Shown: piece by piece, positions 7 through 44,233 of the stretch
Position numbering within the stretch: the stretch's first letter is position 1
Layout of the letters: the number at the start of each line of letters is the position of its first letter
Virus record (IMG/VR): IMGVR_UViG_3300005289_000052
Coordinates: 62,001-126,000 of that record
Length of the DNA: 64,000 nt
Reading direction: 5' to 3' (one strand)
Position numbers and translations under genes: made by a program
Notes under the pieces: model-generated
What the model saw: the letters and a program-made list of their open reading frames with translations, nothing else
What the model was told of the DNA's origin: nothing
Database searches by the model: none

Positions 7-2187
7 TTATTGCTCTTGAGTGGCAACAACGATTTTGTTGGTAAGAACTTTATCCAACCCCTTCACTTTGATGATGGCCATGGCAGGGAGGTGGTTGATG
101 TGCAGGTTACGCGGTTGCACCATGGCTTCCGGGTAAGTACCGCCATCACGTTGAACCATCATGCTGGAAGCCAGCTCAGGAATCCACGCGTGCACACCGA
201 AGGTGAGCGGGTCGATGCCTTCGGATTGGCCCATGCGGGTCAGACCGATGATGATGGTGTCCTTCATACGGAAGTCGAAGGAGGACTCGATTTGGTATTC
301 TGGGAAAGCAATACCGAAGGTGCGGCTGTCGCCGACGACCATCAGGTGACGCTGGAGAACCACGTCGGTACCGATCAGCAGCTTCGGCTGTTGCGAGCCA
401 GTTACGGCAGCGTTCAGCGCAGGCTGGTAGCCGGTGTCGCGGTACATGCGGTAGGACACGTCACGGATGGCGTTAACCAGGATGGCGTTGATGTCTTGCG
501 CACGGTCCATGTCACGGATGGAGTTGATCTCTTGCTCCAGATCAATTTCCTTCTCTTCGAAGAAAGGCTTGATCAGGAAGCGACCAACACCTTCCACTTC
601 TGGGATGGTGTCTTGACGCTTGACGGCCTTGGCGTAGGCCTTCAGGGTTTCTGCGTAGTTCAACAGGCGGGTAACCGCGTTGTTGGTGTTACGCACGCGC
701 ACGGCGTTGATCAGCATTTCCAGGTCGCGAGCGTCGCGGTTCGAACCGGCCGGGGAAGGCGCGGAGATCGGAGCACCCAGCGGGATGTGGAAACGGAAGG
801 TGCGGTCGTTGGTGTCCAGCAGCAGACCACGAGTACGACGGTTGCTGTTGGTACGAGCAGCTTTCAGATCGTAAGCAACAACGGCAGCGCCTTTCAGCGA
901 AGCAACGATTGGAGCACCAGCGCCGGAGACCAGGCTGATTTCTTTACCGTCGGCACCGACGATGGAGTCAACAGTCACAGGGGAGCTGTACACACGGCCG
1001 TTACCGAGCTGAGTGTCGAAGTCGCCGTTCAGGTTGACAGCCAGGCGCACGGTCACGTTGGCAGCGGTGATGGCAGCCAGCAGAGTAGGTGCAACGCCAG
1101 CGGTGGTGAGGGTGTCTTTGTCCAGGACCAGGTCAGCGGTCTTGAAGTTCAGGTTCATCTCACGGTTGGCGCCTTCAACCGACTTCACGAAGTGGCTACG
1201 AGCCAGACGTGCAGTCACATACTTCACAGCTTCGCCGTCGGCGAGCTGGATGTAGATGTTTTCCAGACCGATCGAGTTGTCGATCGCGTCGGTGTGGTCG
1301 ATGATGCCAGCGCCGATCAGGCCAGGGTGTTGGGACAGACCCAGCAGGTTCAGCTCAACGTTGATTGCCAGCGGGGCAGTCGGTACGTCGATGTTGCTGA
1401 TGCGGCGAACAACTGGGGCTACCAGTGCTTCGTCGATGAACTTGTCTGCGTTGCCGCCGTTGGCGAGAACGACAGGAACCAGGCTGGTGGATTCGTCGGC
1501 CAGGATTTTGTGGTCCATGGCAGCTTCGACCAGGTTCTTACGGTTCCAGTCAGTCACCTTACCGGTGTTGCTGTGCTGGATGGCGTTGTGAACCAGGGTA
1601 CGACGAACGGTGATGTCCAGGCCGCCTTGCTCTGGCGGTACGACGGTGGTCGGGTACCACATCTCGGAGAAGCTGTCCTGTACGGCAGCTTTCACGTTGA
1701 AGACGATGGAGTAAGGCAGGAACTTGGCCAGCTCACGTTCGTCGAACGATTCCAGGGATGGGGTGTCACGGGTGTCAACGACACCAGCAGCGCCGCTCGA
1801 ACCGATGTCGACGACGTTGTCACCGGAAGCCTGGGAGCGCATGGCGACTTCGGCGTATTCGGCCGGGTTACCAGCAGCCATGGCAGCGATCGCACCGGCT
1901 TGCAGTTGGGTATCGGTCAGATCTTCTTCGCCGTCTTCACCAGCTTCACCATCTTCCAGGGAAGGGCGCAGCGATGCGAAAGCGTCTTTGATCTCACGGC
2001 CGATGTCTTTGGCGCGGCGATCCAGTTCTTGGAACTGGCCGTCGTCCAGCGACTCCATGGAGATCAGTTGACCGGTGATGTCTTTGGAAGCAACGTCGGT
2101 GCCTTGGGCCGCGATGGTTTGACGCAGGGCAGAGACGACGTTGTTCAGAGGCGAACCAGCAGAGCCTTTGAATTTCAGGAATGACAT
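7..2187 (-). CDS. Major capsid protein (phiKZ gp120-like)
   Basis: 726 aa; acidic N-terminal propeptide with SME/SLE motifs (phiKZ head-protease S/A/G-X-E sites); strong codon bias; syntenic with gp119-like and gp118-like genes. Confidence 0.85.
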   Translation of the reverse strand: MSFLKFKGSAGSPLNNVVSALRQTIAAQGTDVASKDITGQLISMESLDDGQFQELDRRAKDIGREIKDAFASLRPSLEDGEAGEDGEEDLTDTQLQAGAIAAMAAGNPAEYAEVAMRSQASGDNVVDIGSSGAAGVVDTRDTPSLESFDERELAKFLPYSIVFNVKAAVQDSFSEMWYPTTVVPPEQGGLDITVRRTLVHNAIQHSNTGKVTDWNRKNLVEAAMDHKILADESTSLVPVVLANGGNADKFIDEALVAPVVRRISNIDVPTAPLAINVELNLLGLSQHPGLIGAGIIDHTDAIDNSIGLENIYIQLADGEAVKYVTARLARSHFVKSVEGANREMNLNFKTADLVLDKDTLTTAGVAPTLLAAITAANVTVRLAVNLNGDFDTQLGNGRVYSSPVTVDSIVGADGKEISLVSGAGAPIVASLKGAAVVAYDLKAARTNSNRRTRGLLLDTNDRTFRFHIPLGAPISAPSPAGSNRDARDLEMLINAVRVRNTNNAVTRLLNYAETLKAYAKAVKRQDTIPEVEGVGRFLIKPFFEEKEIDLEQEINSIRDMDRAQDINAILVNAIRDVSYRMYRDTGYQPALNAAVTGSQQPKLLIGTDVVLQRHLMVVGDSRTFGIAFPEYQIESSFDFRMKDTIIIGLTRMGQSEGIDPLTFGVHAWIPELASSMMVQRDGGTYPEAMVQPRNLHINHLPAMAIIKVKGLDKVLTNKIVVATQEQ

Positions 2188-11557: not shown

Positions 11558-11558
<1 letters not shown>
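11226..11558 (-). CDS. Short calcineurin-like metallophosphoesterase fragment
   Basis: VVISDYHIG (motif I) and GGDFFD (motif II) present; no GNHD or later motifs; coupled to ligA stop. Confidence 0.5.
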
Positions 11559-13644
<2,086 letters not shown>

Positions 13645-34135: not shown

Positions 34136-34381
34136 TCAAGTAGCCATCGGAGAGATTGAGTCAATGACGATTACTGCTTGTCCTGGCTCTTTCAACTTTT
34201 GGCGATAGACTCGAAGAAAAGCTTCGGCGTCAAATGGTGGTTGGTTCGCAAACCGTTGGCTCATACGTTCCAGTACCTCAGCAGTGTGCTGTGGCGTGGT
34301 GTCGTAGAAACCAGCAGTGATATCCACCTGCACTTGATTCTTGCGCCCAGTATTTTGAAACAGATCGATGACCTTCGACAT
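34136..34381 (-). CDS. Hypothetical protein
   Basis: 81 aa, TGATG coupling to thyA. Confidence 0.55.
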   Translation of the reverse strand: MSKVIDLFQNTGRKNQVQVDITAGFYDTTPQHTAEVLERMSQRFANQPPFDAEAFLRVYRQKLKEPGQAVIVIDSISPMAT

Positions 34382-36069
34382 CAGACGGCTGCCTTGGGGA
34401 ACTCGATTTTTCCAGAATGCTTATACCCAACGATCTCGATGTCTTCCATTTTGAAATCGAAGATGTTCTTGATGTTGGGGTTCAAACGGATGGTTGGACG
34501 GGAATCTTCCACAGGCTCCTGATCCAACCACTTGAGTACCGCAGGCCACTGGTTCTCGTAGATGTGGCAATCGCCGCCGGTCCAAGTGAAGGTATCGGCG
34601 GCGTGACCAGTTACTTGAGCAACCATGTGAGTCAGCATTGCGTATTGTACAACGTTGAACGGATGACCCAGCGGTACATCGTTACTGCGCATGTACAGAT
34701 GCGACGACAGCTTGCGGGTCGGGACCTTGGCATCGTCCAAGAACTGGAAGACTTCAGGATGACGCTGGAACTCGTGTTCGTGACGACGATCATCGTGCAT
34801 CACGGCCATGTTCAACACTTCTTCGGACATATGCTCGAAGCCAGCAGGCTTGTACGTACCCAGCCACTCCAGTCGCTCACGCACCGACATCGGCTTGGAG
34901 AAGAACTGACAGAAGGTGTGGCAAGGACGCAGCGCCATCTCTTCCAGCTCAGCCACGTTCCATGCGGTCAGGATGATACCCCGATCGTCAGGATTGTTGA
35001 TGAGTTGGTCGATGATCTTCTTCACCTGGTCGATCTCGCGACTCACGACGTAGGTTTTACCCTTACCATGAGTTTCGATGTAATCGCTGGAGATCTCACC
35101 GTGGAAGTCATACCCATGTTCAGACAACACGCGGTATTCTTCCTCGCTCACCAAACGAGTGTCATTCCAGTAGCGCCACTGATGCTGGTAGATCTTCGGC
35201 AGTTCGCCAGCAGTGATGGTCTGCGTAGCGATGTCCTTGGACTCCGCGAAACGGTAGAACAGTTCGAACAGCGGAGAGTCTTCAGGCAGCGTTTTCACGA
35301 TGGCTTCAAACAACGGGAGCAGCCACTTGTTGTTGGTGGAGCGCTCGTCGGCCAACAACTCACGGATAGCCGCCGCTGACTTCCAGCGAGTATCTTCGAC
35401 AAAGACCATGACGAAGTCGCGCAACAGGTTTGCCTGAGCAAACGCGTTGAGCAATTCACCCCAGGTGAGGTGACGCCATTCGGCAGTCGTCGCCTTGACC
35501 CACGAATCCCAAATACCGATGTTGTGCTTCTTGAGGAAGCGAACGTTGGTATCGCCCGACAGCATCCAGAGCAACTCGCCCTTGATGCCGAAGTTCCAGT
35601 TGAACTTGGTGGAGATCGACGGCAGTTGACCCATGGAGATGTCCACGGTGTAAGACTGCGAGTTGATCGCACGGGAACGCACCCCGGTACGAGTCTCACT
35701 GTCCACACCCTGCTCCATGATCTTGAGCACCAGCTCGCGGACGTGGTAATCCACGTTGTACGAACTAGGGTCTGGCAAACCAATGATGGCTTTCCCTGGA
35801 GACCACTGGCGCTTCATGCGCTGTTCCAAACGCCACAGCTTGGCCGAAACCTCAGGACGGAACTCGAAAGGAATCCGAGCGTTGTCCAGAGCGCAGATAG
35901 CGTCACCTACCTGCATCGGGTCGTTCAAGTCAGCTAAACACGCTTGGTAGTTACCCGACTCGGCCAGTAACGACATACGCTGGGAGAAGGAATAGAAGTT
36001 CAGCGAGCTGTTGTCGTGATCTTCAATCAGCTTGCGCGCAGTGCGCATACGTTCGTTCAAGTCTTTCAT
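34381..36069 (-). CDS. thyA: Thymidylate synthase (with extensions/insertions)
   Basis: GELLWMLSG, IWDSW, MALRPCH (catalytic Cys), MRSNDVPLGHPFN, GDCHIYENQ. Confidence 0.93.
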   Translation of the reverse strand: MKDLNERMRTARKLIEDHDNSSLNFYSFSQRMSLLAESGNYQACLADLNDPMQVGDAICALDNARIPFEFRPEVSAKLWRLEQRMKRQWSPGKAIIGLPDPSSYNVDYHVRELVLKIMEQGVDSETRTGVRSRAINSQSYTVDISMGQLPSISTKFNWNFGIKGELLWMLSGDTNVRFLKKHNIGIWDSWVKATTAEWRHLTWGELLNAFAQANLLRDFVMVFVEDTRWKSAAAIRELLADERSTNNKWLLPLFEAIVKTLPEDSPLFELFYRFAESKDIATQTITAGELPKIYQHQWRYWNDTRLVSEEEYRVLSEHGYDFHGEISSDYIETHGKGKTYVVSREIDQVKKIIDQLINNPDDRGIILTAWNVAELEEMALRPCHTFCQFFSKPMSVRERLEWLGTYKPAGFEHMSEEVLNMAVMHDDRRHEHEFQRHPEVFQFLDDAKVPTRKLSSHLYMRSNDVPLGHPFNVVQYAMLTHMVAQVTGHAADTFTWTGGDCHIYENQWPAVLKWLDQEPVEDSRPTIRLNPNIKNIFDFKMEDIEIVGYKHSGKIEFPKAAV

Positions 36070-37631: not shown

Positions 37632-39344
37632 TTAGTCGCTGGACGACGAACCGCCATCGGAGCTACCACCGGAGTCATTACCACCGCCGTAACCGCTGTC
37701 ATCGCGAGCATCACGATGTGGCGCTGGGTCGTAACGGAATGGAGCTTCGTCAACGTGAGCGAACTCAGGACGCTGGCCACGAGCGTAGACTTTGTCGCCC
37801 GCAACGTTGTCACCGGAACCCGAGTGGGACTGCTGGATGTTGCGCTCGTGTGCAGCTTCGGCTCGAGCTTGCAGTTCCGGGTTCAGTTCGATGGGACGAG
37901 ACAGCCCACGACCGATTTCCGGGTTGTCACCGTAGTTGACGTTCAGACCACCGTCAGCACGACGCTCTACAGATTCTGGCAGGCGGACTTCTTCACCGAA
38001 GGGTTGACCCGTGCGGATCTCTTCGGCAACTTCGTCACCCATACGCCCAGCTTCTTCTTCATCGTCCAGGTCATCCGGCAGATCGCCGTCTTCTTCCTGC
38101 TCGAGTTCCAGACCATTGCCGTCATCGAGCGGTTCTTCGGGCACTGGATCGCCTTTCAGGGCGTCCCAGCCTTCCAGCACCGATGCCTTGATGGCAGCGA
38201 TGGTTTGGTCAGGTGCAGGATCGTGTGGATCGATAGCGATCACCAGAGCCTTCTTGCCTTCCATCGGATGGTCGATGAAACCGTCGAAGAACGCTTGACC
38301 TGCACGTTCAACAACCGCCTCGCCTTCCTGGAGTTTCCAGCTCAACAGATCGAAGTCGCTGGATTCGAGGTAAGCGTTGGCCACTTCGAGCGACAGGACT
38401 TCGGCAGGCAGTTGAGCAATGCGCTCAGCTTCGGCACGGGCGTCAGACGCACGTTGTGCTTCGGCTTCATCGAACTGCGCTTGTTCTTCGGCCTTGGCTT
38501 TGTCGTCAGCGATCAGACGCTTGTAGGCGTCAGCCAGGATGTACGACCAGCGCTCGAGGTTGAACCCCGACGCAGGGTCGGTGATTTCGTCCAGGGTGTA
38601 GAAGCCGCAGGTGATCAGCTCTTCTTCTTTGCAGGTGACTTCGATGTGTGGCGGAATGCCGACCGAATACACCAGACCCAGGTGTTGTTTGCCGACGTCG
38701 TTGGCGTCGTCACGGATGAAGCCTTCGTGACTGAAAGTGGTCGGGCAGTTCTGAATCAGTTCCTGGAAGGTCATGCCGGAGAAGTCCAGCTCTTCGTCCA
38801 TTTCCTCGATCAGGCTGGCGACCATGGCGTCGCGAGCATTGAGGGTCCAGTTCGGGTAGAAGCGCATCGACTGAGCTTCTGGATGACCGGCCGCACCGAT
38901 GGAGTGGTTGCCCGCCAGCTTTTCTTCGCCGACCTTCTTGCTGCGCTGGAAGATGAAGAACTCGATCTGGTTCTTGGCTTCGTTGTGACGATGGATCATC
39001 ACGTACGGGATCGGGTGACGGAACAGCGGACTTTCTTCCAGACGGCGGCGACGAGTCATCACCATGTCCAGCTTGATGCGGTCGAAACGCTCGGACATTA
39101 CGTCCTTGAGTGGATCGGCGGTGTACTCGAGACCTTGTACAGTGAACTCGGCGTCGATGGCGTCACGCCAGTAGCCGATCACCAGGCGGTCTTTCGAGTC
39201 GACTGCTTCATCACCCGGTTGTACGGTGGGAGCAGCGAGGCCAGCTTCGGACGGGTGCACGTTACCCAGCTCAGCTACAGCTTCGCCAACAGGCAGAGCC
39301 TGGTCTTGAGCCAATTCTTCCGACGGTTGTTGTTGCAGATCCAT
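37632..39344 (-). CDS. Nudix-like (COG4112-type) hydrolase fused to long acidic/low-complexity tail
   Basis: LEE.P.FRHPIPYV, QR...GEEKLAGNHSIGAAGH, LIEEMDEEL, VGKQHLGLV; C-terminal acidic region ending GGSSDGGSSSSD. Confidence 0.7.
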   Translation of the reverse strand: MDLQQQPSEELAQDQALPVGEAVAELGNVHPSEAGLAAPTVQPGDEAVDSKDRLVIGYWRDAIDAEFTVQGLEYTADPLKDVMSERFDRIKLDMVMTRRRRLEESPLFRHPIPYVMIHRHNEAKNQIEFFIFQRSKKVGEEKLAGNHSIGAAGHPEAQSMRFYPNWTLNARDAMVASLIEEMDEELDFSGMTFQELIQNCPTTFSHEGFIRDDANDVGKQHLGLVYSVGIPPHIEVTCKEEELITCGFYTLDEITDPASGFNLERWSYILADAYKRLIADDKAKAEEQAQFDEAEAQRASDARAEAERIAQLPAEVLSLEVANAYLESSDFDLLSWKLQEGEAVVERAGQAFFDGFIDHPMEGKKALVIAIDPHDPAPDQTIAAIKASVLEGWDALKGDPVPEEPLDDGNGLELEQEEDGDLPDDLDDEEEAGRMGDEVAEEIRTGQPFGEEVRLPESVERRADGGLNVNYGDNPEIGRGLSRPIELNPELQARAEAAHERNIQQSHSGSGDNVAGDKVYARGQRPEFAHVDEAPFRYDPAPHRDARDDSGYGGGNDSGGSSDGGSSSSD

Positions 39345-39404: not shown

Positions 39405-39905
39405 TTACGTGCGGTTACGACGAGCCTCAGCAACTCTGGCTTGGATGCTGTCGAAGAATGCCGTCATTTCTTCATCAGAGACTTCTGGGGTATAACCACA
39501 CATGTCTTTGGCGTAGCGGAACATGCCCCCGATCAGTTCTCGCATCTTGCGTTCGAGATCAGACGGGAAGCCACCACGGTATTCAGACGGTGTGTTCAAC
39601 GACCACTCAACAGGTTTGTTCGGGTCGTCGTAGTCGTGGATGGTGATAGTCCAGCGATGGTTACTAAACTCATCACCCACTTTAAAGAAGAACACTACGT
39701 TGTTGCAGTCAGCATCGCCGTAGTAGTTGTAGTCGTGGAAGGGTTCGTAATACTTGCGATCACGGAAATTGGTAGTCCGCAATTGCAACTCGCCCCACGA
39801 CGTAGGAACAGACCAAACCAAGTCACGAGGTAACTTGACTTTCTTGAGTCGGTCCAGTTGCTGAGCGTAAAAATGAAGTGCTGCACTGCCTTCTGAGAAA
39901 GCCAT
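39405..39905 (-). CDS. Hypothetical protein
   Basis: GGAGG RBS before MAFSEG. Confidence 0.65.
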   Translation of the reverse strand: MAFSEGSAALHFYAQQLDRLKKVKLPRDLVWSVPTSWGELQLRTTNFRDRKYYEPFHDYNYYGDADCNNVVFFFKVGDEFSNHRWTITIHDYDDPNKPVEWSLNTPSEYRGGFPSDLERKMRELIGGMFRYAKDMCGYTPEVSDEEMTAFFDSIQARVAEARRNRT

Positions 39906-39923
39906 AGAACCTCCGAACATAAA

Positions 39924-39943
39924 AGGCAGGCCGAAGCCTGCCT
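39924..39943 (-). terminator. Hairpin terminator after Nampt-like gene
   Basis: AGGCAGGC-CGAA-GCCTGCCT. Confidence 0.65.
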
Positions 39944-39955
39944 CTATGCTGTTAC

Positions 39956-41914
39956 TTAGTAGGTGGCACCGCCGAGACGCTCACGGATTTCACCGAGAGT
40001 GGTACGGTTGGTGAAGTGACTGTTCTTGAACACGGAACGCAGTTCGCCCGACGAAGTAGCCAGGGTATCGAACGACATGTCCTGTTCTTGAGACAGTACG
40101 TAGTCATCTTCTACCAGGTCTACACGCAGGAAGCCTTTCGCAGACTTCTTGGCAGTTTCGCCTTCGGTGGCTGGCGCTTTGTACAGGTCGATGAGAGTAT
40201 CTTCGATCTGGATCGCAGTGCCTTTGATAGCCTGGCCGAAAGTGTCGCGAGTGATGTACTGGTAGGTGTAGCTACCGATACCGAGTACCACGTTGCCCGA
40301 AGCGAAGGCTTTCTTCGCCAGACGACGCATGATCTCTTCGGTGCGTTGAACAGTGATGCTGTCACCGTAGATCAGACCGATGTGTTCGTCCAGCAGACGG
40401 TAGCCTTCCATGGTGGTGGTGCCACCGAAGGTTTCCCACAGGCATTCCACAGCGCCTTTCTCTTCTGGGGTCAGCACGTGCTCCACGATGTGGTAGCCAC
40501 ACTGGTAACGACCGGTCAGATCGTATTCCAGCTCGATCTCCAGCGACTTGAGGAAGCCGTAGATCATTGGCTTCACTGGGTCGTGGACTTCGGTCGGCAG
40601 ACGCTCAGGCGACAGATGACGAGTAGCAGCAGTCATGCCCTGGAAGGAGTCGACCACAGTACGACCAGCACGCTCGAGGATCGCCGCATCCAGTTCAGCC
40701 CACGAACGGTTACGATTGCGATTGATCGAATCGGTAGCACGCCACAGCTTGTGTTCGCGATCACGGAAGTAGATGTGCTTGCGACGACCGTCAGCAGGAC
40801 CACGACGGTACATCATTTGCTCAGCTTCTTCTTGGGTGAAGATCTCAGCACCACAGATGATCTCAACCGGATCACCCGAGTCAGGACGGATCACGACTTT
40901 GGCCAGACCGAGGCTGTCTTTCGGACGCGACAGGATCACGTCTTTCAGTTCAGGAACGATCTTGGTGACGACGCCCCAGAAGTCAAACGAGTCCGACACC
41001 AGAGCCACAGCACCGTTCGGGTAGACCTCGGTGATCAGACGCTTGAAGAAGCGCTTCTCGGCTTCCAGGCGCATGCGCTTGTAGCCTTCCTCGTCGACCT
41101 TCTGGTTTTTCTCTTGAAGCTGTTCGAGTTCGAAGTGCAGCTCGGAGAGGATGTTGGCCGTAGCAACGGCGTGTTCGGTAGCCGGAATCGAGCAGGCCAC
41201 GAACTCCTTCTCTACGTTCGCGCCGTAGTAGTCTTCGGCGTAGTCGATCGCAGGGATGGTGTCGGTACCGCAGAAGCTCAGCAGGTGACCGAAGGAACCA
41301 CGCACGTCTTCCAGACCGATGCCACGGAACGAGAAGTCGTGACCCTGGACGTCAACGAACTCTTTCGGAGTACCGGTGACTTGAGCCCAGTGTTTCAGGA
41401 CACGACGGTATTCGAAAGCGATGGTCGAACAGGTGACGATTTTCCAGATCAACGCCGACATCGAGGTTTCGAGGTAGTTCGTGAACCAGTAGAAGTCAGG
41501 GTGCGTGTTGTAGATGGTGTACAACGGCACGTTCATGTTGACACGTGCACCTTCCGGCAGCGCCAGTACTTCGATCGGCAGGTAGCCCAGGTCGTGCAGA
41601 CGCTCGAAACCATCAACTGGAACCTTGCCTTCGCCGAGGTAGTAGTCCATGCGGCGCTTGTAGCGCTTGATGACTTCATCTTTCGGCTTGGAGAAGAAGC
41701 TGCGCTGCCACAGCTCGTTCAGTTCTTGCAGGATACCTTGCAGACCAGCCCAGACCACCTTGTGATCCCAGAACTGCGACTTCGATACGGAACGCTCGAA
41801 CAGGCGATCAGCACGCGCCGTCAGGTTCCCGTAGGTGAAGTTGGAGCCTTTCGGGAACATTGGGCGGTGGCCGACTTTGTAACCGTCACAAACGTTGGGG
41901 GCAAACAGGTTCAT
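39956..41914 (-). CDS. nadV: Nicotinamide phosphoribosyltransferase-like protein (Nampt/Namat)
   Basis: DGYKVGH, HDFSFRG, GTDTIPA, IPATEH, VSDSFD, IRPDSGDP, GLIYGDSIT, GIGSYTYQ, KKSAKG. Confidence 0.92.
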   Translation of the reverse strand: MNLFAPNVCDGYKVGHRPMFPKGSNFTYGNLTARADRLFERSVSKSQFWDHKVVWAGLQGILQELNELWQRSFFSKPKDEVIKRYKRRMDYYLGEGKVPVDGFERLHDLGYLPIEVLALPEGARVNMNVPLYTIYNTHPDFYWFTNYLETSMSALIWKIVTCSTIAFEYRRVLKHWAQVTGTPKEFVDVQGHDFSFRGIGLEDVRGSFGHLLSFCGTDTIPAIDYAEDYYGANVEKEFVACSIPATEHAVATANILSELHFELEQLQEKNQKVDEEGYKRMRLEAEKRFFKRLITEVYPNGAVALVSDSFDFWGVVTKIVPELKDVILSRPKDSLGLAKVVIRPDSGDPVEIICGAEIFTQEEAEQMMYRRGPADGRRKHIYFRDREHKLWRATDSINRNRNRSWAELDAAILERAGRTVVDSFQGMTAATRHLSPERLPTEVHDPVKPMIYGFLKSLEIELEYDLTGRYQCGYHIVEHVLTPEEKGAVECLWETFGGTTTMEGYRLLDEHIGLIYGDSITVQRTEEIMRRLAKKAFASGNVVLGIGSYTYQYITRDTFGQAIKGTAIQIEDTLIDLYKAPATEGETAKKSAKGFLRVDLVEDDYVLSQEQDMSFDTLATSSGELRSVFKNSHFTNRTTLGEIRERLGGATY

Positions 41915-42822
41915 GCCAGAAGTCCTTGTACAGGGTGCCAGTAGATTTTGTCGTCATTGACTTCGTCAGGACGCTTGTTGTACGACGCGTTCGGGTGCCA
42001 CGAGTTGGTGGTGCGAATCTGGTCGTAGTGTTTGGTCAGTAGAGCGTAGCCTTTGGTGAACAGACCGTGAGTGACGAACAGCTCGAGAGAGCAGTAGTCA
42101 TTATCGCCGCTCACACGCATGTAGTCCGCCTCGAAAGGCTGGAGCTTCTCACGCAGAGCTTTGGCCAGCTCGATGAAGGTGAAGCCACCGTCGCAGATGT
42201 CGTCAACAACCAACCAGGTCAAACGAGGGGTTGGCTCAAACGGGATGTCGACACTGGTGCCAACGATCTTGCCGGTTTCGACGTCACGGTGTTTGGAACC
42301 GTAAGCGATACGAGTAACACCAACCAGGCGGGCCAGTTCTTCAACCTTCTTCACCGCCCCAGCGTCAGGGGCTACCAGTACAACGCGTTCCCAGGCGTGA
42401 CGACCGAGCTTAGCAACGATCTGCGGTAGGGTGATGTGGGTCAGGCGATCCAACAGAGCAGCACCGACGTCACTGTGAATGTCCAGGACCGTCACGGTGT
42501 TGTAGCGCTGGAGGTTGATGATGTCGCAGAACGGCTTGATGGTCAGCGACTCACCTGGACGTGGCACGCGGTCTTGGCGAGCGTACGGCAGGTAAGGCAT
42601 GTACAGGTGGATCTCGAGGGCTGGGTTCAGCCGACGGATCGCATCAGTGACCATGACGAGGTCCATGATGTCCACTGCGTTCTTGAGGTGAGCGGTCAGG
42701 TTGACAGCTTTCCAGCTCGCTACAGCGGGGTCGACGTACGGATGCACTTCACCGCCCGGCAACACTTTCGAGTTAGCGGGAAACGAGATGTTAACGTCCC
42801 CACGATTGCTAATCAAAATCAT
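41911..42822 (-). CDS. prs: Ribose-phosphate pyrophosphokinase-like protein (Adps candidate)
   Basis: GGEVHP, MPYLPYARQDR, LDIHS, APDAGA, VVDDICDGGFTF, VTHGLF; 4-nt overlap with Nampt-like gene. Confidence 0.88.
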   Translation of the reverse strand: MILISNRGDVNISFPANSKVLPGGEVHPYVDPAVASWKAVNLTAHLKNAVDIMDLVMVTDAIRRLNPALEIHLYMPYLPYARQDRVPRPGESLTIKPFCDIINLQRYNTVTVLDIHSDVGAALLDRLTHITLPQIVAKLGRHAWERVVLVAPDAGAVKKVEELARLVGVTRIAYGSKHRDVETGKIVGTSVDIPFEPTPRLTWLVVDDICDGGFTFIELAKALREKLQPFEADYMRVSGDNDYCSLELFVTHGLFTKGYALLTKHYDQIRTTNSWHPNASYNKRPDEVNDDKIYWHPVQGLLA

Positions 42823-42882
42823 GTGGCTTCCTTTTCTTTATTGCATACGGGTTACTCTCACCCAATACCACCACTATGTAAG

Positions 42883-42912
42883 AAAAAAAAGAGGGGACCG
42901 AAGCCCCCTCTT
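42883..42912 (-). terminator. Intrinsic terminator
   Basis: GAGGGG-AC-CGAA-GC-CCCCTC hairpin with T8 on minus strand. Confidence 0.75.
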
Positions 42913-42914
42913 GA

Positions 42915-43160
42915 TTAACCGAAGACCCTCTGCATCAGCGATCGTTTCTTCGGCGCAGGCCGGGAAGCGACAGCTAATACAGCAAGCACCGCCAGGCCAG
43001 CAATTGCTACGTTGGCTTGGGCATTGGTGTTGTTACGTTCTGTCTTCTGTTCTTCGACCTTCAATTCCAAACGGGCAAGTTCAGCTTTCCGTTCAGCAAT
43101 CTGGAGTTCGACCGAAGCCAGCTCAGTTTCTTGCGCGGTGATCAGTTGTTGCTCGCTCAT
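42915..43160 (-). CDS. Coiled-coil protein with C-terminal membrane segment
   Basis: Heptad E/K/L region then VAIAGLAVLAVLAVA; start MSEQQ by ATGA overlap. Confidence 0.6.
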   Translation of the reverse strand: MSEQQLITAQETELASVELQIAERKAELARLELKVEEQKTERNNTNAQANVAIAGLAVLAVLAVASRPAPKKRSLMQRVFG

Positions 43161-43324
43161 TTCGACCCCTTGGGCGGACGCCCTTCCATCTTGCGCCAAG
43201 TTTCATCAAGCTTCTTCATGTGCTTGGCGAGTTCTTCGTGTTTCCCTGCTTGATGTAACTCCAAGGCTTCTGAGCCCGGCATCATCAGGGTACCGTCGGA
43301 ATAACGGACTGCTTTACTGCTCAT
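43157..43324 (-). CDS. Small hypothetical protein (55 aa, not in ORF track)
   Basis: MSSKAVRYSDGTLMMPGSEALELHQAGKHEELAKHMKKLDETWRKMEGRPPKGSK fills the gap with coupled start/stop. Confidence 0.6.
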   Translation of the reverse strand: MSSKAVRYSDGTLMMPGSEALELHQAGKHEELAKHMKKLDETWRKMEGRPPKGSK

Positions 43325-43736
43325 TCATTGGGTCCTCTTCATAGATCACGATGCCCAGTTGCTGACGCTCCCAATTGAGCATAGCGACCTTCGAGAAGTC
43401 TTTGCTGGGATACATAGCCGTAGCCATGTTCTCACAAGCCTCGATCACCTCAGGGTTCATCTGCTCACCTTTAGCAGCAAACCCGCGCCCTTCCTTCAAA
43501 CAGTTCTTGGCGAAGTCACGCTTCTTCGTCATGTACTGCTCTTCCAGATACGTAGCATCGATCTGGTGGCGCTCACCTTCGGCCTTCATTTGCTGAGCAC
43601 CGTAGAACCCACCACAAACCACCACCAACATGCCCAGCGCAATAGCAAAGTTGTTGGACTGTTTACGGAGCCACTGACCGAAGGTAGCGAACAGAAGAAC
43701 CACTACGTACAACACAGCCTCACCACCCTTCTTCAT
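43314..43736 (-). CDS. Membrane protein
   Basis: Two N-terminal hydrophobic segments. Confidence 0.65.
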   Translation of the reverse strand: MKKGGEAVLYVVVLLFATFGQWLRKQSNNFAIALGMLVVVCGGFYGAQQMKAEGERHQIDATYLEEQYMTKKRDFAKNCLKEGRGFAAKGEQMNPEVIEACENMATAMYPSKDFSKVAMLNWERQQLGIVIYEEDPMNEQ

Positions 43737-44233
43737 CGGGTCACCGCCGGAGCCTGACGCGGCTGCATGTAGCGAGTGTCGTAGCCTTCTTCACCCGGCA
43801 GCAGGTTTTGTGGATCAGGGTACAGCATCTGCCAAATACGCAGATCGTTACCACCGCGCTGTTTCAACTCAGAGCAGTACAAGTTCAGCATCTGAAAAAC
43901 GTTGCACGGGAACATCGCACTGCGCATCGGGGTAGGGTCGCCATCCGAACGCTTAACGATGTCGGTACGGACACCTTCTTCTGCCTTGCCTTCCTTGATC
44001 CAAGCCTGCGCTTGGTTCTTCAACATGTTGCCCAGGATGCGGTTATCAATCACCCCGCAGATGAACAGCTCTGGCATACCGAGGCGCGACAGACCTACGG
44101 TGTACGAGTAGTTCAACCCGTTGCCACCAGCGTGCTGCGGCACACCGGAAACGCTCAGGATCGCAAACTTGTTAGCAGCGATCGAACGCTTGATGTGACG
44201 CTTCACTTGTTTCTTGGTGTCTGCAACTTTCAT
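43733..44233 (-). CDS. DUF4262-like protein
   Basis: YSYTVGL..LGMPEL, WQMLYPD..LPGE. Confidence 0.65.
   Translation of the reverse strand: MKVADTKKQVKRHIKRSIAANKFAILSVSGVPQHAGGNGLNYSYTVGLSRLGMPELFICGVIDNRILGNMLKNQAQAWIKEGKAEEGVRTDIVKRSDGDPTPMRSAMFPCNVFQMLNLYCSELKQRGGNDLRIWQMLYPDPQNLLPGEEGYDTRYMQPRQAPAVTR

What the first reader, a model, noticed from the sequence alone, without database searches (positions are those of the whole stretch)
39956..42822. NARP1-architecture NAD+ reconstitution operon (anti-defence)
Overlapping PRPP-synthetase-like and Nampt-like genes form a two-gene unit bounded by terminators. This matches the published phage NAD reconstitution pathway 1, in which Adps pyrophosphorylates ADP-ribose and Namat adds nicotinamide, countering Thoeris, DSR and SIR2-type NAD-depleting defences. 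No NMNAT is visible in the window, which favours NARP1 over ordinary salvage. The system type is known, but this is a divergent version.
Basis: partly seen in the sequence, partly recalled or inferred. Interest (0 to 1): 0.7.

Follow-up and report, generated by a model that had tools for sequence, protein, structure and literature searches.

The report
NARP1 NAD-rebuilding operon, jumbo phage
This is a genuine two-gene phage operon of the already described NARP1 type, which rebuilds NAD+ from the fragments left by NAD-destroying bacterial defences; it sits in an uncultured phiKZ-like jumbo phage, and its second enzyme carries an extra 128-residue domain of unknown role.

Summary
Two minus-strand genes, 41911-42822 (303 aa, PRPP-synthetase-like) and 39956-41914 (652 aa, Nampt-like), overlap by ATGA. 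Stable UUCG-loop hairpins with U-runs lie immediately on both sides.

The interpretation also holds. The 652-aa protein matches the solved Namat structures far better than Nampt and carries the published Namat adenine-clamp signature (GSYTYQYITRD). The 303-aa protein falls below every curated Prs cut-off. It carries the phage-Adps donor loop DDICDGG-TF and the catalytic lysine, and it groups with 83 viral Adps away from cellular Prs.

The complete 243.7-kb phage genome has no NMNAT, PnuC or second Nampt, so NARP2 and NARP3 are excluded. Its closest isolated relatives (RP12, Phabio, PA1C) are already listed as NARP1 carriers in the original paper. It is therefore a new member of a known kind.

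Three points go beyond the finding:
- Namat has a confidently folded 128-aa insertion with no detectable fold relative, at a site where homologues carry 0-147 aa.
- Sister phages carry a 49%-identical adps allele beside an 84-88%-identical namat, which suggests cassette exchange.
- A Macro-domain gene, a possible ADPR-1''-P phosphatase, lies 53 kb away.

No biochemistry was done.

The parts
42889..42912 (-). Upstream intrinsic-terminator-like hairpin (10-bp stem, UUCG loop, then U8). It ends the preceding gene (42915-43199) and isolates the operon's 5' side.
   Evidence: Scan; fold -18.3 kcal/mol, z -4.8; sequence.
42823..42888 (-). Leader between the terminator and adps, with an AAGGAAG Shine-Dalgarno about 4 nt before the ATG. 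No sigma-70-like promoter was found (phiKZ-like phages use their own polymerases).
   Evidence: Sequence; promoter scan found none on this strand.
41911..42822 (-). adps: ADP-ribose pyrophosphate synthetase (Prs-like), 303 aa.
42292..42294 (-). Adps Lys177, aligned with the catalytic Lys185 of ICP1 Adps (Lys162 in SPbetaL1).
   Evidence: Alignments A1 and A6, where K177 is invariant in 36 sequences; role taken from PMC13586617.
42175..42204 (-). Adps PP loop DDICDGGFTF (aa 207-216), the remodelled ATP-donor site. Cellular Prs has DDMIDTGGTL here.
   Evidence: 71 of the 83 viral Adps examined carry DDICDGGxTF exactly and most of the rest differ at one or two positions; role from PMC13586617.
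39956..41914 (-). namat: nicotinamide ADP-ribose transferase (Nampt-like), 652 aa. Its start overlaps the adps stop (ATGA).
41762..41818 (-). Namat beta1-beta2 loop (the SCL element of the clamp), aa 33-51. Arg37 aligns with the adenine-stacking Arg40 of SPbetaL1 Namat. The loop is 8 residues longer here.
   Evidence: HMMER alignment to 9w5x; role from PMC12774641.
41054..41149 (-). Namat insertion 1 (aa ~256-287). It extends two long helices into a helical hairpin, and is present in the jumbo-phage clade.
40463..40846 (-). Namat insertion 2 (aa ~357-484), an alpha/beta domain inserted between the RPDSGDP strand-helix and the next barrel helix. It has no known fold relative.
40244..40276 (-). 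Namat SCH clamp signature GSYTYQYITRD (aa 547-557). The aromatic residues at motif positions 3 and 7 stack on the adenine of ADPR-PP/NAD.
   Evidence: motif definition in PMC12774641.
39924..39943 (-). Downstream terminator-like hairpin (8-bp perfect stem, UUCG loop, then UUUAUGUU), 13 nt after the namat stop.
   Evidence: Sequence; fold -21.8 kcal/mol, z -4.6; strict search.

Best explanation
The two genes are a NARP1 operon (Adps followed by Namat) of a complete 243.7-kb phiKZ-like jumbo phage. When a host defence (TIR, SIR2 or SEFIR effectors of Thoeris, DSR1/2, SIR2-HerA and similar systems) cleaves NAD+ into ADP-ribose and nicotinamide, the proposed sequence is as follows. Adps transfers the beta,gamma-pyrophosphate of ATP to the 1'' hydroxyl of ADP-ribose, giving ADPR-PP and AMP. 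Namat then replaces the pyrophosphate with nicotinamide, regenerating NAD+ in one step without NMN or an NMNAT. Shown here: gene architecture, family placement, presence of the catalytic and specificity residues, absence of alternative pathways in the genome, and a high-confidence Namat-like fold. Inferred from characterised homologues (SPbetaL1, Bas63, ICP1): the substrates, the products and the anti-defence effect. The two insertions in Namat are lineage decorations. Insertions at the same sites exist in the functional Bas63 enzyme, so they are compatible with activity. Their role is unknown.
For: (1) Architecture: adps then namat on one strand with an ATGA overlap, bracketed by terminator-like hairpins. 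Of 83 other viral Adps loci examined, 77 have a Namat homologue downstream on the same strand.
(2) Namat identity: the best solved-structure sequence match is 9w5x/9w5w at E 5e-116, against 1e-42 for mammalian Nampt. Foldseek names these entries 'Crystal structure of Namat'; TM by target is 0.93, ahead of HdNadV and Nampt.
(3) The clamp signature GS-X-phi-X-phi-X-phi-TRD with aromatic X (PMC12774641) is present as GSYTYQYITRD. Of the 70 Adps-linked Namats in which the pattern could be found, 69 have Phe/Tyr at the first clamp position and 58 at both. The NARP2 NadV of Vibrio phage VCPH has GGGLLQHCDRD. Arg37 aligns with the stacking Arg40.
(4) The Namat catalytic core is invariant: D10, Y12, F194, R197, D218, H248, R343, D345.
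(5) Adps: Lys177 aligns with the catalytic Lys185, and the acceptor residues equivalent to R87, H121, D161, D212, D213 and D216 are invariant. The PP loop is DDICDGGFTF, as in phage Adps and unlike the DDMIDTGGTL of Prs.
(6) The protein scores 92 bits on TIGR01251, below the 113-bit cut-off, and is far below all Prs equivalog cut-offs; E. coli Prs scores 423.
(7) Pairwise scores are 106 bits to Bas63 Adps and 100 bits to ICP1 Adps, against 57 bits to E. coli Prs.
(8) In a tree, the 84 viral Adps sequences including the window separate from 12 Prs with SH-aLRT 100.
(9) The complete genome (DTR, 100% by CheckV) has no CTP_transf_like/NMNAT domain, no NatV homologue, no PnuC and only this one NAPRTase gene.
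(10) RP12, Phabio and PA1C, the closest isolated relatives, are listed as Adps-associated Namat / NARP1 in Osterman et al..
Against: No enzyme assay, expression data or phage phenotype exists for this operon. Two adenine-contacting aromatic residues of ICP1 Adps (F18, F92) are not conserved here (F92 is Pro); they are not conserved in the Bas63-type or RP12 Adps either. SPbetaL1 Namat retains about half of human Nampt's PRPP activity in vitro (PMC12774641), so some NMN synthesis cannot be excluded. The Prs outgroup of the tree is Gammaproteobacteria only, and the viral rows were chosen by similarity, so the tree is a weak test. The effect of the 128-aa insertion on activity is unknown. NCBIfam's Nampt/NadV model NF006629 passes its cut-off because it does not separate Namat from Nampt.
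Confidence: 0.88

Rival explanations
1. Ordinary nicotinamide salvage. The Prs-like enzyme makes PRPP, the Nampt-like enzyme makes NMN, and the host's NadD or NadR adenylates NMN to NAD+. This would be a NARP2-like route that borrows the last step from the host.
For: Both folds are those of Prs and Nampt. The Nampt/NadV equivalog model NF006629 is passed at 440 bits against a 405-bit cut-off. Characterised Namat keeps appreciable PRPP-to-NMN activity in vitro (PMC12774641).
Against: The Prs-like protein fails every curated Prs cut-off and has the Adps-type donor loop. The Nampt-like protein has the aromatic clamp motif that NARP2 NadV lacks and is much closer to Namat than to NadV or Nampt. 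In Osterman et al., 94% of phages with KVP40-type Nampt also encode Nmnat; this complete genome has none.
Confidence: 0.06
2. Dual-use pathway. The pair works mainly as NARP1, but Namat also draws on host PRPP to make NMN, so the phage raises NAD+ supply for its own NAD-dependent DNA ligase even without defence activation.
For: Residual PRPP activity has been reported for SPbetaL1 Namat. The same window encodes a LigA-type NAD-dependent DNA ligase at 11558-13633.
Against: Osterman et al. saw no excess NAD+ with NARP1 phages in defence-free cells. No NMNAT is available from the phage. There are no data for this enzyme.
Confidence: 0.05
3. A nucleotide-metabolism Prs. The 303-aa enzyme supplies PRPP for phage nucleotide synthesis, as part of the neighbouring thymidylate-synthase and Nudix-like gene cluster, and its link to the Nampt-like gene is incidental.
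For: Nucleotide-metabolism genes lie within 6 kb (thymidylate synthase homologue, Nudix-fold protein).
Against: The overlapping stop and start, plus the terminators on both sides, make the pair one unit. The adps-namat pairing recurs in 77 of 83 other viral loci regardless of neighbours. The protein is sub-threshold on Prs models.
Confidence: 0.01

Closest known systems
NARP1 of Bacillus phage SPbetaL1 (Adps + Namat; Osterman et al. 2024; Namat structures 9w5x/9w5w)
   Same: Same two-gene order. The Namat catalytic core, SCH clamp motif and SCL arginine are conserved, with Foldseek TM 0.93 by target. The Adps catalytic lysine is conserved.
   Different: Namat here is 652 aa against about 491, because of a 32-aa and a 128-aa insertion. 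Foldseek reports about 35% identity. SPbetaL1 is a temperate Bacillus siphovirus, whereas this is a phiKZ-like jumbo phage.
NARP1 of Escherichia phage Bas63 (JohannRWettstein, Felixounavirus), validated by deletion
   Same: Adps is 36% identical and Namat 36% identical over the full length. Bas63 Namat (593 aa) also has an insertion at the same site (87 aa in its near-identical homologue humlepung) and a shorter insertion 1.
   Different: The inserted sequences align poorly and differ in length (87 against 128 aa), so homology of the inserts is not established.
NARP1 of Vibrio phage ICP1 (Adps structures, PMC13586617)
   Same: Adps is 32% identical. K185, R87, H121, D161, D212, D213 and D216 are all conserved, and the PP loop DDICDG is shared.
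   Different: F92 is replaced by Pro and F18 is not clearly aligned. The window Adps has a 15-aa insertion after the PP-loop helix and a longer C-terminus.
NARP1 of jumbo phages Ralstonia RP12/RP31, Pseudomonas Phabio, BRkr and PA1C (catalogued, not assayed)
   Same: These are the nearest isolated relatives: Namat is 50% identical to RP12 and Adps 41% to PA1C. They have the same architecture, the same insertion 1, and the same jumbo-phage background.
   Different: Their insertion 2 is only 48-59 aa, against 128-130 aa here.
NARP2 (KVP40-type NadV + NatV), for example Vibrio phage VCPH
   Same: Nampt-family fold and the same catalytic core.
   Different: NadV is only 26-30% identical, lacks the aromatic clamp (GGGLLQHCDRD) and is paired with an NMNAT instead of a Prs-like gene. 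The window genome has no NMNAT.
NARP1-AP (NARP1 plus Macro-domain ADPR-1''-P phosphatase Adpp), for example Vibrio phage Cody or Gary
   Same: The genome encodes a 146-aa Macro-domain protein that is 27% identical (E 9e-9) to the Macro 'phosphatase' lying between adps and namat in phage Cody.
   Different: Here the Macro gene is about 53 kb from the operon and outside the window. Its substrate is untested.

Membership tests
NARP1 (Adps + Namat) | A Prs-like gene and a Nampt-like gene adjacent and co-oriented (Osterman: Namat within 10 genes of Adps). | tested here: met
   Overlapping genes 41911-42822 and 39956-41914 on the minus strand. The same arrangement occurs in 77 of 83 other viral loci.
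NARP1 (Adps + Namat) | The Prs-like protein belongs to the phage Adps clade, separate from cellular Prs. | tested here: met
   In the tree, the window sequence nests among 83 viral Adps (including ICP1 and a Bas63-type sequence), split from 12 Prs with SH-aLRT 100. It is below all NCBIfam Prs cut-offs. Caveat: the outgroup is narrow (Gammaproteobacteria only).
NARP1 (Adps + Namat) | Adps catalytic lysine (ICP1 K185) and the conserved acceptor-site residues R87, H121, D161, D212, D213 and D216. | tested here: met
   All are invariant in alignment A1. K177 is invariant in A6.
NARP1 (Adps + Namat) | Adps-type remodelled PP loop (donor site), conserved across Adps homologues. | tested here: met
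   The window has DDICDGGFTF. 71 of the 83 viral Adps carry DDICDGGxTF exactly and most others differ at one or two positions; E. coli Prs has DDMIDTGGTL.
NARP1 (Adps + Namat) | Aromatic contacts to the ADPR adenine seen in ICP1 Adps (F18', F92). | tested here: inconclusive
   F92 aligns with Pro here, Met in humlepung and Cys in RP12. The N-terminal alignment around F18 is unreliable. These residues are evidently not family-wide.
NARP1 (Adps + Namat) | Loss of the C-terminal alpha11-alpha12 regulatory/filament module of Prs. | tested here: inconclusive
   The C-terminal tail after the TTN motif is shorter than in E. coli Prs and unalignable with it. No Adps structure was available in the PDB copy for checking, and no model of Adps was built.
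NARP1 (Adps + Namat) | Namat SCH clamp signature GS-X-phi-X-phi-X-phi-TRD with aromatic X. | tested here: met
   GSYTYQYITRD at aa 547-557.
NARP1 (Adps + Namat) | Namat SCL loop supplying a stacking Arg, Lys or Tyr. | tested here: met
   Arg37 aligns with SPbetaL1 Arg40 in the HMMER alignment to 9w5x. The loop is 8 residues longer, so the geometry is not verified.
NARP1 (Adps + Namat) | Nampt-like catalytic core in Namat (catalytic His; Arg306 and Asp308 equivalents; Phe189, Asp215 and Tyr15'). | tested here: met
   H248, R343, D345, F194, D218 and Y12 are invariant in 48 homologues.
NARP1 (Adps + Namat) | ADPR plus ATP gives ADPR-PP; ADPR-PP plus nicotinamide gives NAD+; rescue from NAD-depleting defences. 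| not testable with these tools
   Requires biochemistry and phage assays.
NARP2 (Nampt + NMNAT) | An NMNAT (NatV-type or any CTP_transf_like domain) encoded by the phage. | tested here: not met
   No PF01467 match and no NatV homologue in the complete 243,669-bp genome. The control genomes all matched.
NARP3 (NadR-like + PnuC) | A PnuC transporter and a NadR-type RNK-NMNAT. | tested here: not met
   No PF04973 and no PF01467 match in the genome.
NARP1-AP (extended NARP1) | A Macro-domain ADPR-1''-P phosphatase within two genes of NARP1. | tested here: not met
   None of the neighbours has a Macro domain. The only Macro gene is about 53 kb away.
Canonical ribose-phosphate diphosphokinase (Prs) | Score above the curated cut-off of TIGR01251 or the Prs equivalogs. 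| tested here: not met
   92.3 bits against a cut-off of 113. E. coli Prs scores 422.7 on the same model.

The most novel reading that the evidence does not exclude
The 128-aa domain inserted in Namat (aa 357-484) folds with confidence, has no detectable fold relative, and sits at a site where homologues carry anything from 0 to 147 aa. It could be a functional add-on rather than neutral decoration. For example, it might be a sensor or regulator of Namat activity, a docking module, or a shield against a host inhibitor. In the same vein, the exchange of 49%-identical adps alleles between otherwise 84-91% identical operons could reflect selection on Adps by a host counter-measure or by variant ADPR-derived substrates.
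Probability: 0.12. Interest if true: 0.55.

Novelty: new member of a known kind. Interest (0 to 1): 0.3.

Why it matters
It adds a well-supported NARP1 operon in an uncultured phiKZ-like jumbo phage that also encodes its own NAD-dependent DNA ligase. This fits the view that NAD+ supply is a pressure point for phages. For annotation, the case shows that short sequence rules separate NARP1 from salvage without biochemistry: the Namat clamp motif, the Adps DDICDGG-TF loop, and absence of NMNAT. The variable insertion site in Namat and the single-gene exchange of adps alleles are small leads about how this counter-defence evolves, and they can be tested. Neither changes the known mechanism.

Tried and rejected
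- Namat + Adps complex prediction, to test whether the insertion docks Adps: score 0.01, which the tool states is no evidence either way.
- Fold searches of the isolated insertion domain all gave nothing. Foldseek against PDB had best E 0.7. AFDB clusters had best E 0.2 with TM below 0.3. The ESM Atlas search by shape gave TM of 0.43 or less. VIA-align wide gave best Z 4.7 on a helical sub-part only. The protein-language-model search of the insertion returned only NAPRTase context.
- The 570-aa gene downstream as an accessory Nudix: it is Nudix-fold-like, but it lies near NARP1 in only 2 of 85 other loci, so it was rejected as part of the system.
- The 166-aa gene downstream: no family match. 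It is conserved only in close relatives and is absent from L171 and L007.
- A RyDEP-like RyR domain: the only hit is 16 bits inside a phiKZ internal-head-protein homologue, so it is spurious.
- PADLOC: no hits.
- The PDB copy did not return an Adps structure, so no direct structural comparison was possible for Adps.
- The ICP1 isolate that was fetched has a stop in the 5' part of namat as annotated, so ICP1 Namat was left out of the alignments.
Full report
WHAT IS THERE. The stretch 39956-42822 holds two long minus-strand ORFs. One runs 41911..42822 (303 aa) and the other 39956..41914 (652 aa). The stop of the first overlaps the start of the second in ATGA. Pfam finds the two Prs domains in the first (Pribosyltran_N and Pribosyltran, both just above cut-off) and NAPRTase in the second. 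PHROGs gives phrog_619 'ribose-phosphate pyrophosphokinase' at 6e-73 and phrog_448 'nicotinamide phosphoribosyl transferase' at 8e-173.

A 10-bp hairpin with a UUCG loop and a U8 tail lies at 42889-42912 on the coding strand, directly upstream. A second one, with an 8-bp perfect stem, a UUCG loop and a U-rich tail, lies at 39924-39943, 13 nt after the second stop. Both fold much better than shuffled sequence, with z of -4.8 and -4.6. A strict search finds only about ten such hairpins in the whole 244-kb genome.

GENOMIC SETTING. The window is bases 62001-126000 of a 243,669-bp viral record with direct terminal repeats, rated 100% complete. The window also encodes a phiKZ-type major capsid protein (PF25620, 3e-211) and a LigA-type NAD-dependent DNA ligase. 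The element is thus an uncultured phiKZ-like jumbo phage. The operon sits in a long run of minus-strand genes.

IS THE SECOND GENE NAMAT OR NAMPT? Sequence search of all PDB chains puts 9w5x/9w5w first at E 5e-116, with HdNadV at 3.5e-90 and mammalian Nampt near 1e-42. An AlphaFold2 model built on 48 homologues has mean pLDDT 92.6. Foldseek ranks 'Crystal structure of Namat' (9w5x/9w5w) first with TM 0.93 by target, then HdNadV, then Nampt.

The Namat structure paper defines a selectivity clamp. One part is a helix element with the signature GS-X-phi-X-phi-X-phi-TRD, in which the X residues are aromatic and stack on adenine. The other is a beta1-beta2 loop that gives a further stacking Arg, Lys or Tyr (PMC12774641). 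The window protein reads GSYTYQYITRD at aa 547-557, and its Arg37 aligns with the stacking Arg40. In 77 Namat homologues found next to viral Adps genes the pattern could be located in 70; of these, 69 have Phe/Tyr at the first clamp position and 58 at both. The NARP2-type NadV of Vibrio phage VCPH, which sits next to an NMNAT, reads GGGLLQHCDRD. The shared catalytic core is invariant, namely H248, R343, D345, F194, D218 and Y12.

IS THE FIRST GENE ADPS OR PRS? On NCBIfam it scores 92 bits on TIGR01251, against a cut-off of 113, and 37-73 bits on Prs models whose cut-offs are 296-536. E. coli Prs scores 423 bits on TIGR01251. BLASTP gives 106 bits (36% identity) to Bas63 Adps, 100 bits (32%) to the structurally characterised ICP1 Adps, and only 57 bits (27% over 180 aa) to E. 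coli Prs.

In the alignment with ICP1 Adps, the catalytic Lys185 and the acceptor-site residues R87, H121, D161, D212, D213 and D216 are all conserved (roles from PMC13586617). The PP loop, which that paper describes as remodelled into the ATP-donor site and conserved among Adps, reads DDICDGGFTF here. 71 of the 83 viral Adps examined carry DDICDGGxTF exactly, and most of the rest differ at one or two positions. E. coli Prs has DDMIDTGGTL. A maximum-likelihood tree places the window protein among 83 viral Adps, nearest to sequences from 310-kb and 324-kb viral contigs and then to RP12 and a further viral contig. Twelve Prs sequences split off with SH-aLRT 100. That outgroup is Gammaproteobacteria only, so the tree is supportive rather than decisive. 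Two aromatic adenine contacts of ICP1 Adps (F18, F92) are not conserved here, but they are not conserved in the Bas63-type or RP12 proteins either.

ALTERNATIVE PATHWAYS EXCLUDED. The complete genome has no CTP_transf_like (NMNAT) domain, while all 14 control genomes matched. It has no homologue of a KVP40-type NatV, no PnuC and only this one NAPRTase gene. NARP2 and NARP3 are therefore absent. The remaining loophole is use of PRPP with the host's NMNAT, and the clamp motif and the Adps-type donor loop argue against it.

HOW KNOWN IS IT? Adps homologues occur in 1,541 and Namat/Nampt homologues in 2,023 of 50,697 phage records. The closest isolates are jumbo phages: Ralstonia RP12/RP31 (Namat 50% identical), Pseudomonas Phabio and BRkr, and PA1C (Adps 41% identical). 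RP12, Phabio, PA1C and the Bas63-like humlepung are all listed as NARP1 in the supplementary tables of Osterman et al.. Metagenomes hold Namat relatives at 84-92% identity on contigs of 180-239 kb with the same gene order. The finding is a new member of a known kind.

WHAT IS UNUSUAL. (a) Insertions in Namat. Relative to SPbetaL1 Namat there are two. The first is about 32 aa (aa 256-287) and lengthens a helical hairpin. The second is about 128 aa (aa 357-484) and lies between the RPDSGDP strand-helix and the next barrel helix. Across homologues, the stretch aligned with window aa 352-488 varies from 17 to 147 residues. The Bas63-type enzyme has 87 aa at the insertion site proper, RP31 has 59 and Phabio has 48. 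The long version folds confidently on its own into an alpha/beta domain (pLDDT 88). It has no significant structural relative in the PDB, AFDB clusters or the ESM Atlas, and few of its residues are conserved. A Namat-Adps co-fold gave no answer. Bas63 NARP1 is functional, so insertions at this site are compatible with activity. Their role is open.

(b) adps allele exchange. Four related phages share namat at 84-91% identity and flanking genes at 69-91%. Their adps genes nevertheless fall into two types. The window and L170 are 96% identical to each other, L171 and L006 are 99% identical to each other, and the two types are only 49% identical. DNA homology to L006 fades inside adps at about 42459 and returns at about 41927, just before the namat start. 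This looks like recombinational replacement of most of adps alone. Both alleles keep the DDICDGG-TF loop.

(c) An unlinked Macro gene. A 146-aa Macro-domain gene lies about 53 kb away, outside the window. It is 27% identical (E 9e-9) to the Macro 'phosphatase' that sits between adps and namat in Vibrio phage Cody, the NARP1-AP arrangement described for aRES evasion. Whether it serves NARP1 here is untested.

NEIGHBOURS NOT PART OF THE SYSTEM. The 166-aa ORF just downstream has no family match; its likely start is the ATG at 39905, behind a GGAGG. The 570-aa ORF further downstream has a divergent Nudix-like fold plus an acidic tail. Both are conserved only in close relatives. The Nudix-like gene lies near NARP1 in only 2 of 85 other loci.

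MECHANISM AND CONFIDENCE. The most likely mechanism (0.88) is the published one. After a TIR, SIR2 or SEFIR effector splits NAD+, Adps pyrophosphorylates ADP-ribose using ATP, and Namat joins ADPR-PP to nicotinamide to give NAD+. The architecture, residues, fold and genome-wide absence of alternatives are shown here. The substrates, products and anti-defence effect are inferred from SPbetaL1, Bas63 and ICP1. The main rival is PRPP-based salvage completed by the host NMNAT, at about 0.06.

VERDICT. Novelty is low and interest is modest (0.3), resting on the insertion domain and the adps allele exchange.

Noticed in passing
window 11558-13633 (-): A 691-aa LigA-type NAD-dependent DNA ligase with adenylation, OB, HhH and BRCT domains. 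The phage itself has an NAD-consuming replication enzyme, which gives it a direct stake in the NAD+ pool.
   Followed up: partly
window 41927-42459 compared with L006, L171 and L170: adps exists as two alleles that are 49% identical among phages whose namat (84-91%) and flanking genes (69-91%) are much closer. DNA homology drops out inside adps and returns just before the namat start, which suggests single-gene recombinational replacement.
   Followed up: partly
outside the window: genome 157,033-157,473 (-), = L008:1432-1872: A 146-aa Macro-domain protein (PF01661, 2e-11). It is 27% identical to the Macro 'phosphatase' inserted between adps and namat in Vibrio phage Cody (NARP1-AP type). It could be an unlinked ADPR-1''-P phosphatase.
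   Followed up: partly
window 37632-39344 (-): A 570-aa protein. Residues ~60-280 resemble a divergent Nudix-type 'phosphoesterase' fold (Atlas TM 0.72/0.84; no Pfam hit), followed by a coiled, acidic, low-complexity tail. The same fold is fused to dCTP or dCMP deaminases elsewhere, which hints at nucleotide metabolism. It is not a regular NARP1 neighbour.
   Followed up: partly
window 39405-39905 (-): A 166-aa ORF right after the operon's terminator, with no family match. It has only weak language-model resemblance (0.87) to immunity-protein-like clusters. The ORF lister's start at 39920 is probably wrong: a GGAGG precedes the ATG at 39905.
   Followed up: partly
window 34381-36069 (-): A thymidylate-synthase homologue that is unusually long (562 aa), with its Pfam match split into two stretches. 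In the relative L006 the region is called as two genes (460 + 102 aa). It may be an insertion or a split gene.
   Followed up: no
window 7-2187 (-): A phiKZ-type major capsid protein (PF25620, 3e-211), which identifies the element as a phiKZ-like jumbo phage.
   Followed up: partly
window 43733-44233 (-): A DUF4262 protein (166 aa) conserved upstream of the operon in the close relatives L006, L170 and L171. Its function is unknown.
   Followed up: no
L003 (Ralstonia phage RP12) 2756-9228 and L172 (Vibrio phage Cody) 1195-2121 and from 8598 to the locus end: In these phages NARP1 is flanked by RtcB-like and/or RNA-ligase genes. This is a recurring neighbourhood, perhaps RNA repair next to NAD repair, and it is not seen in the window.
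   Followed up: no
P0070, P0073, P0090 (891-902 aa homologues); phrog_12872: Some homologues are long enough to be Adps-Namat fusions, and one PHROG family matches both window proteins. A fusion would be further evidence that the two act together.
   Followed up: no
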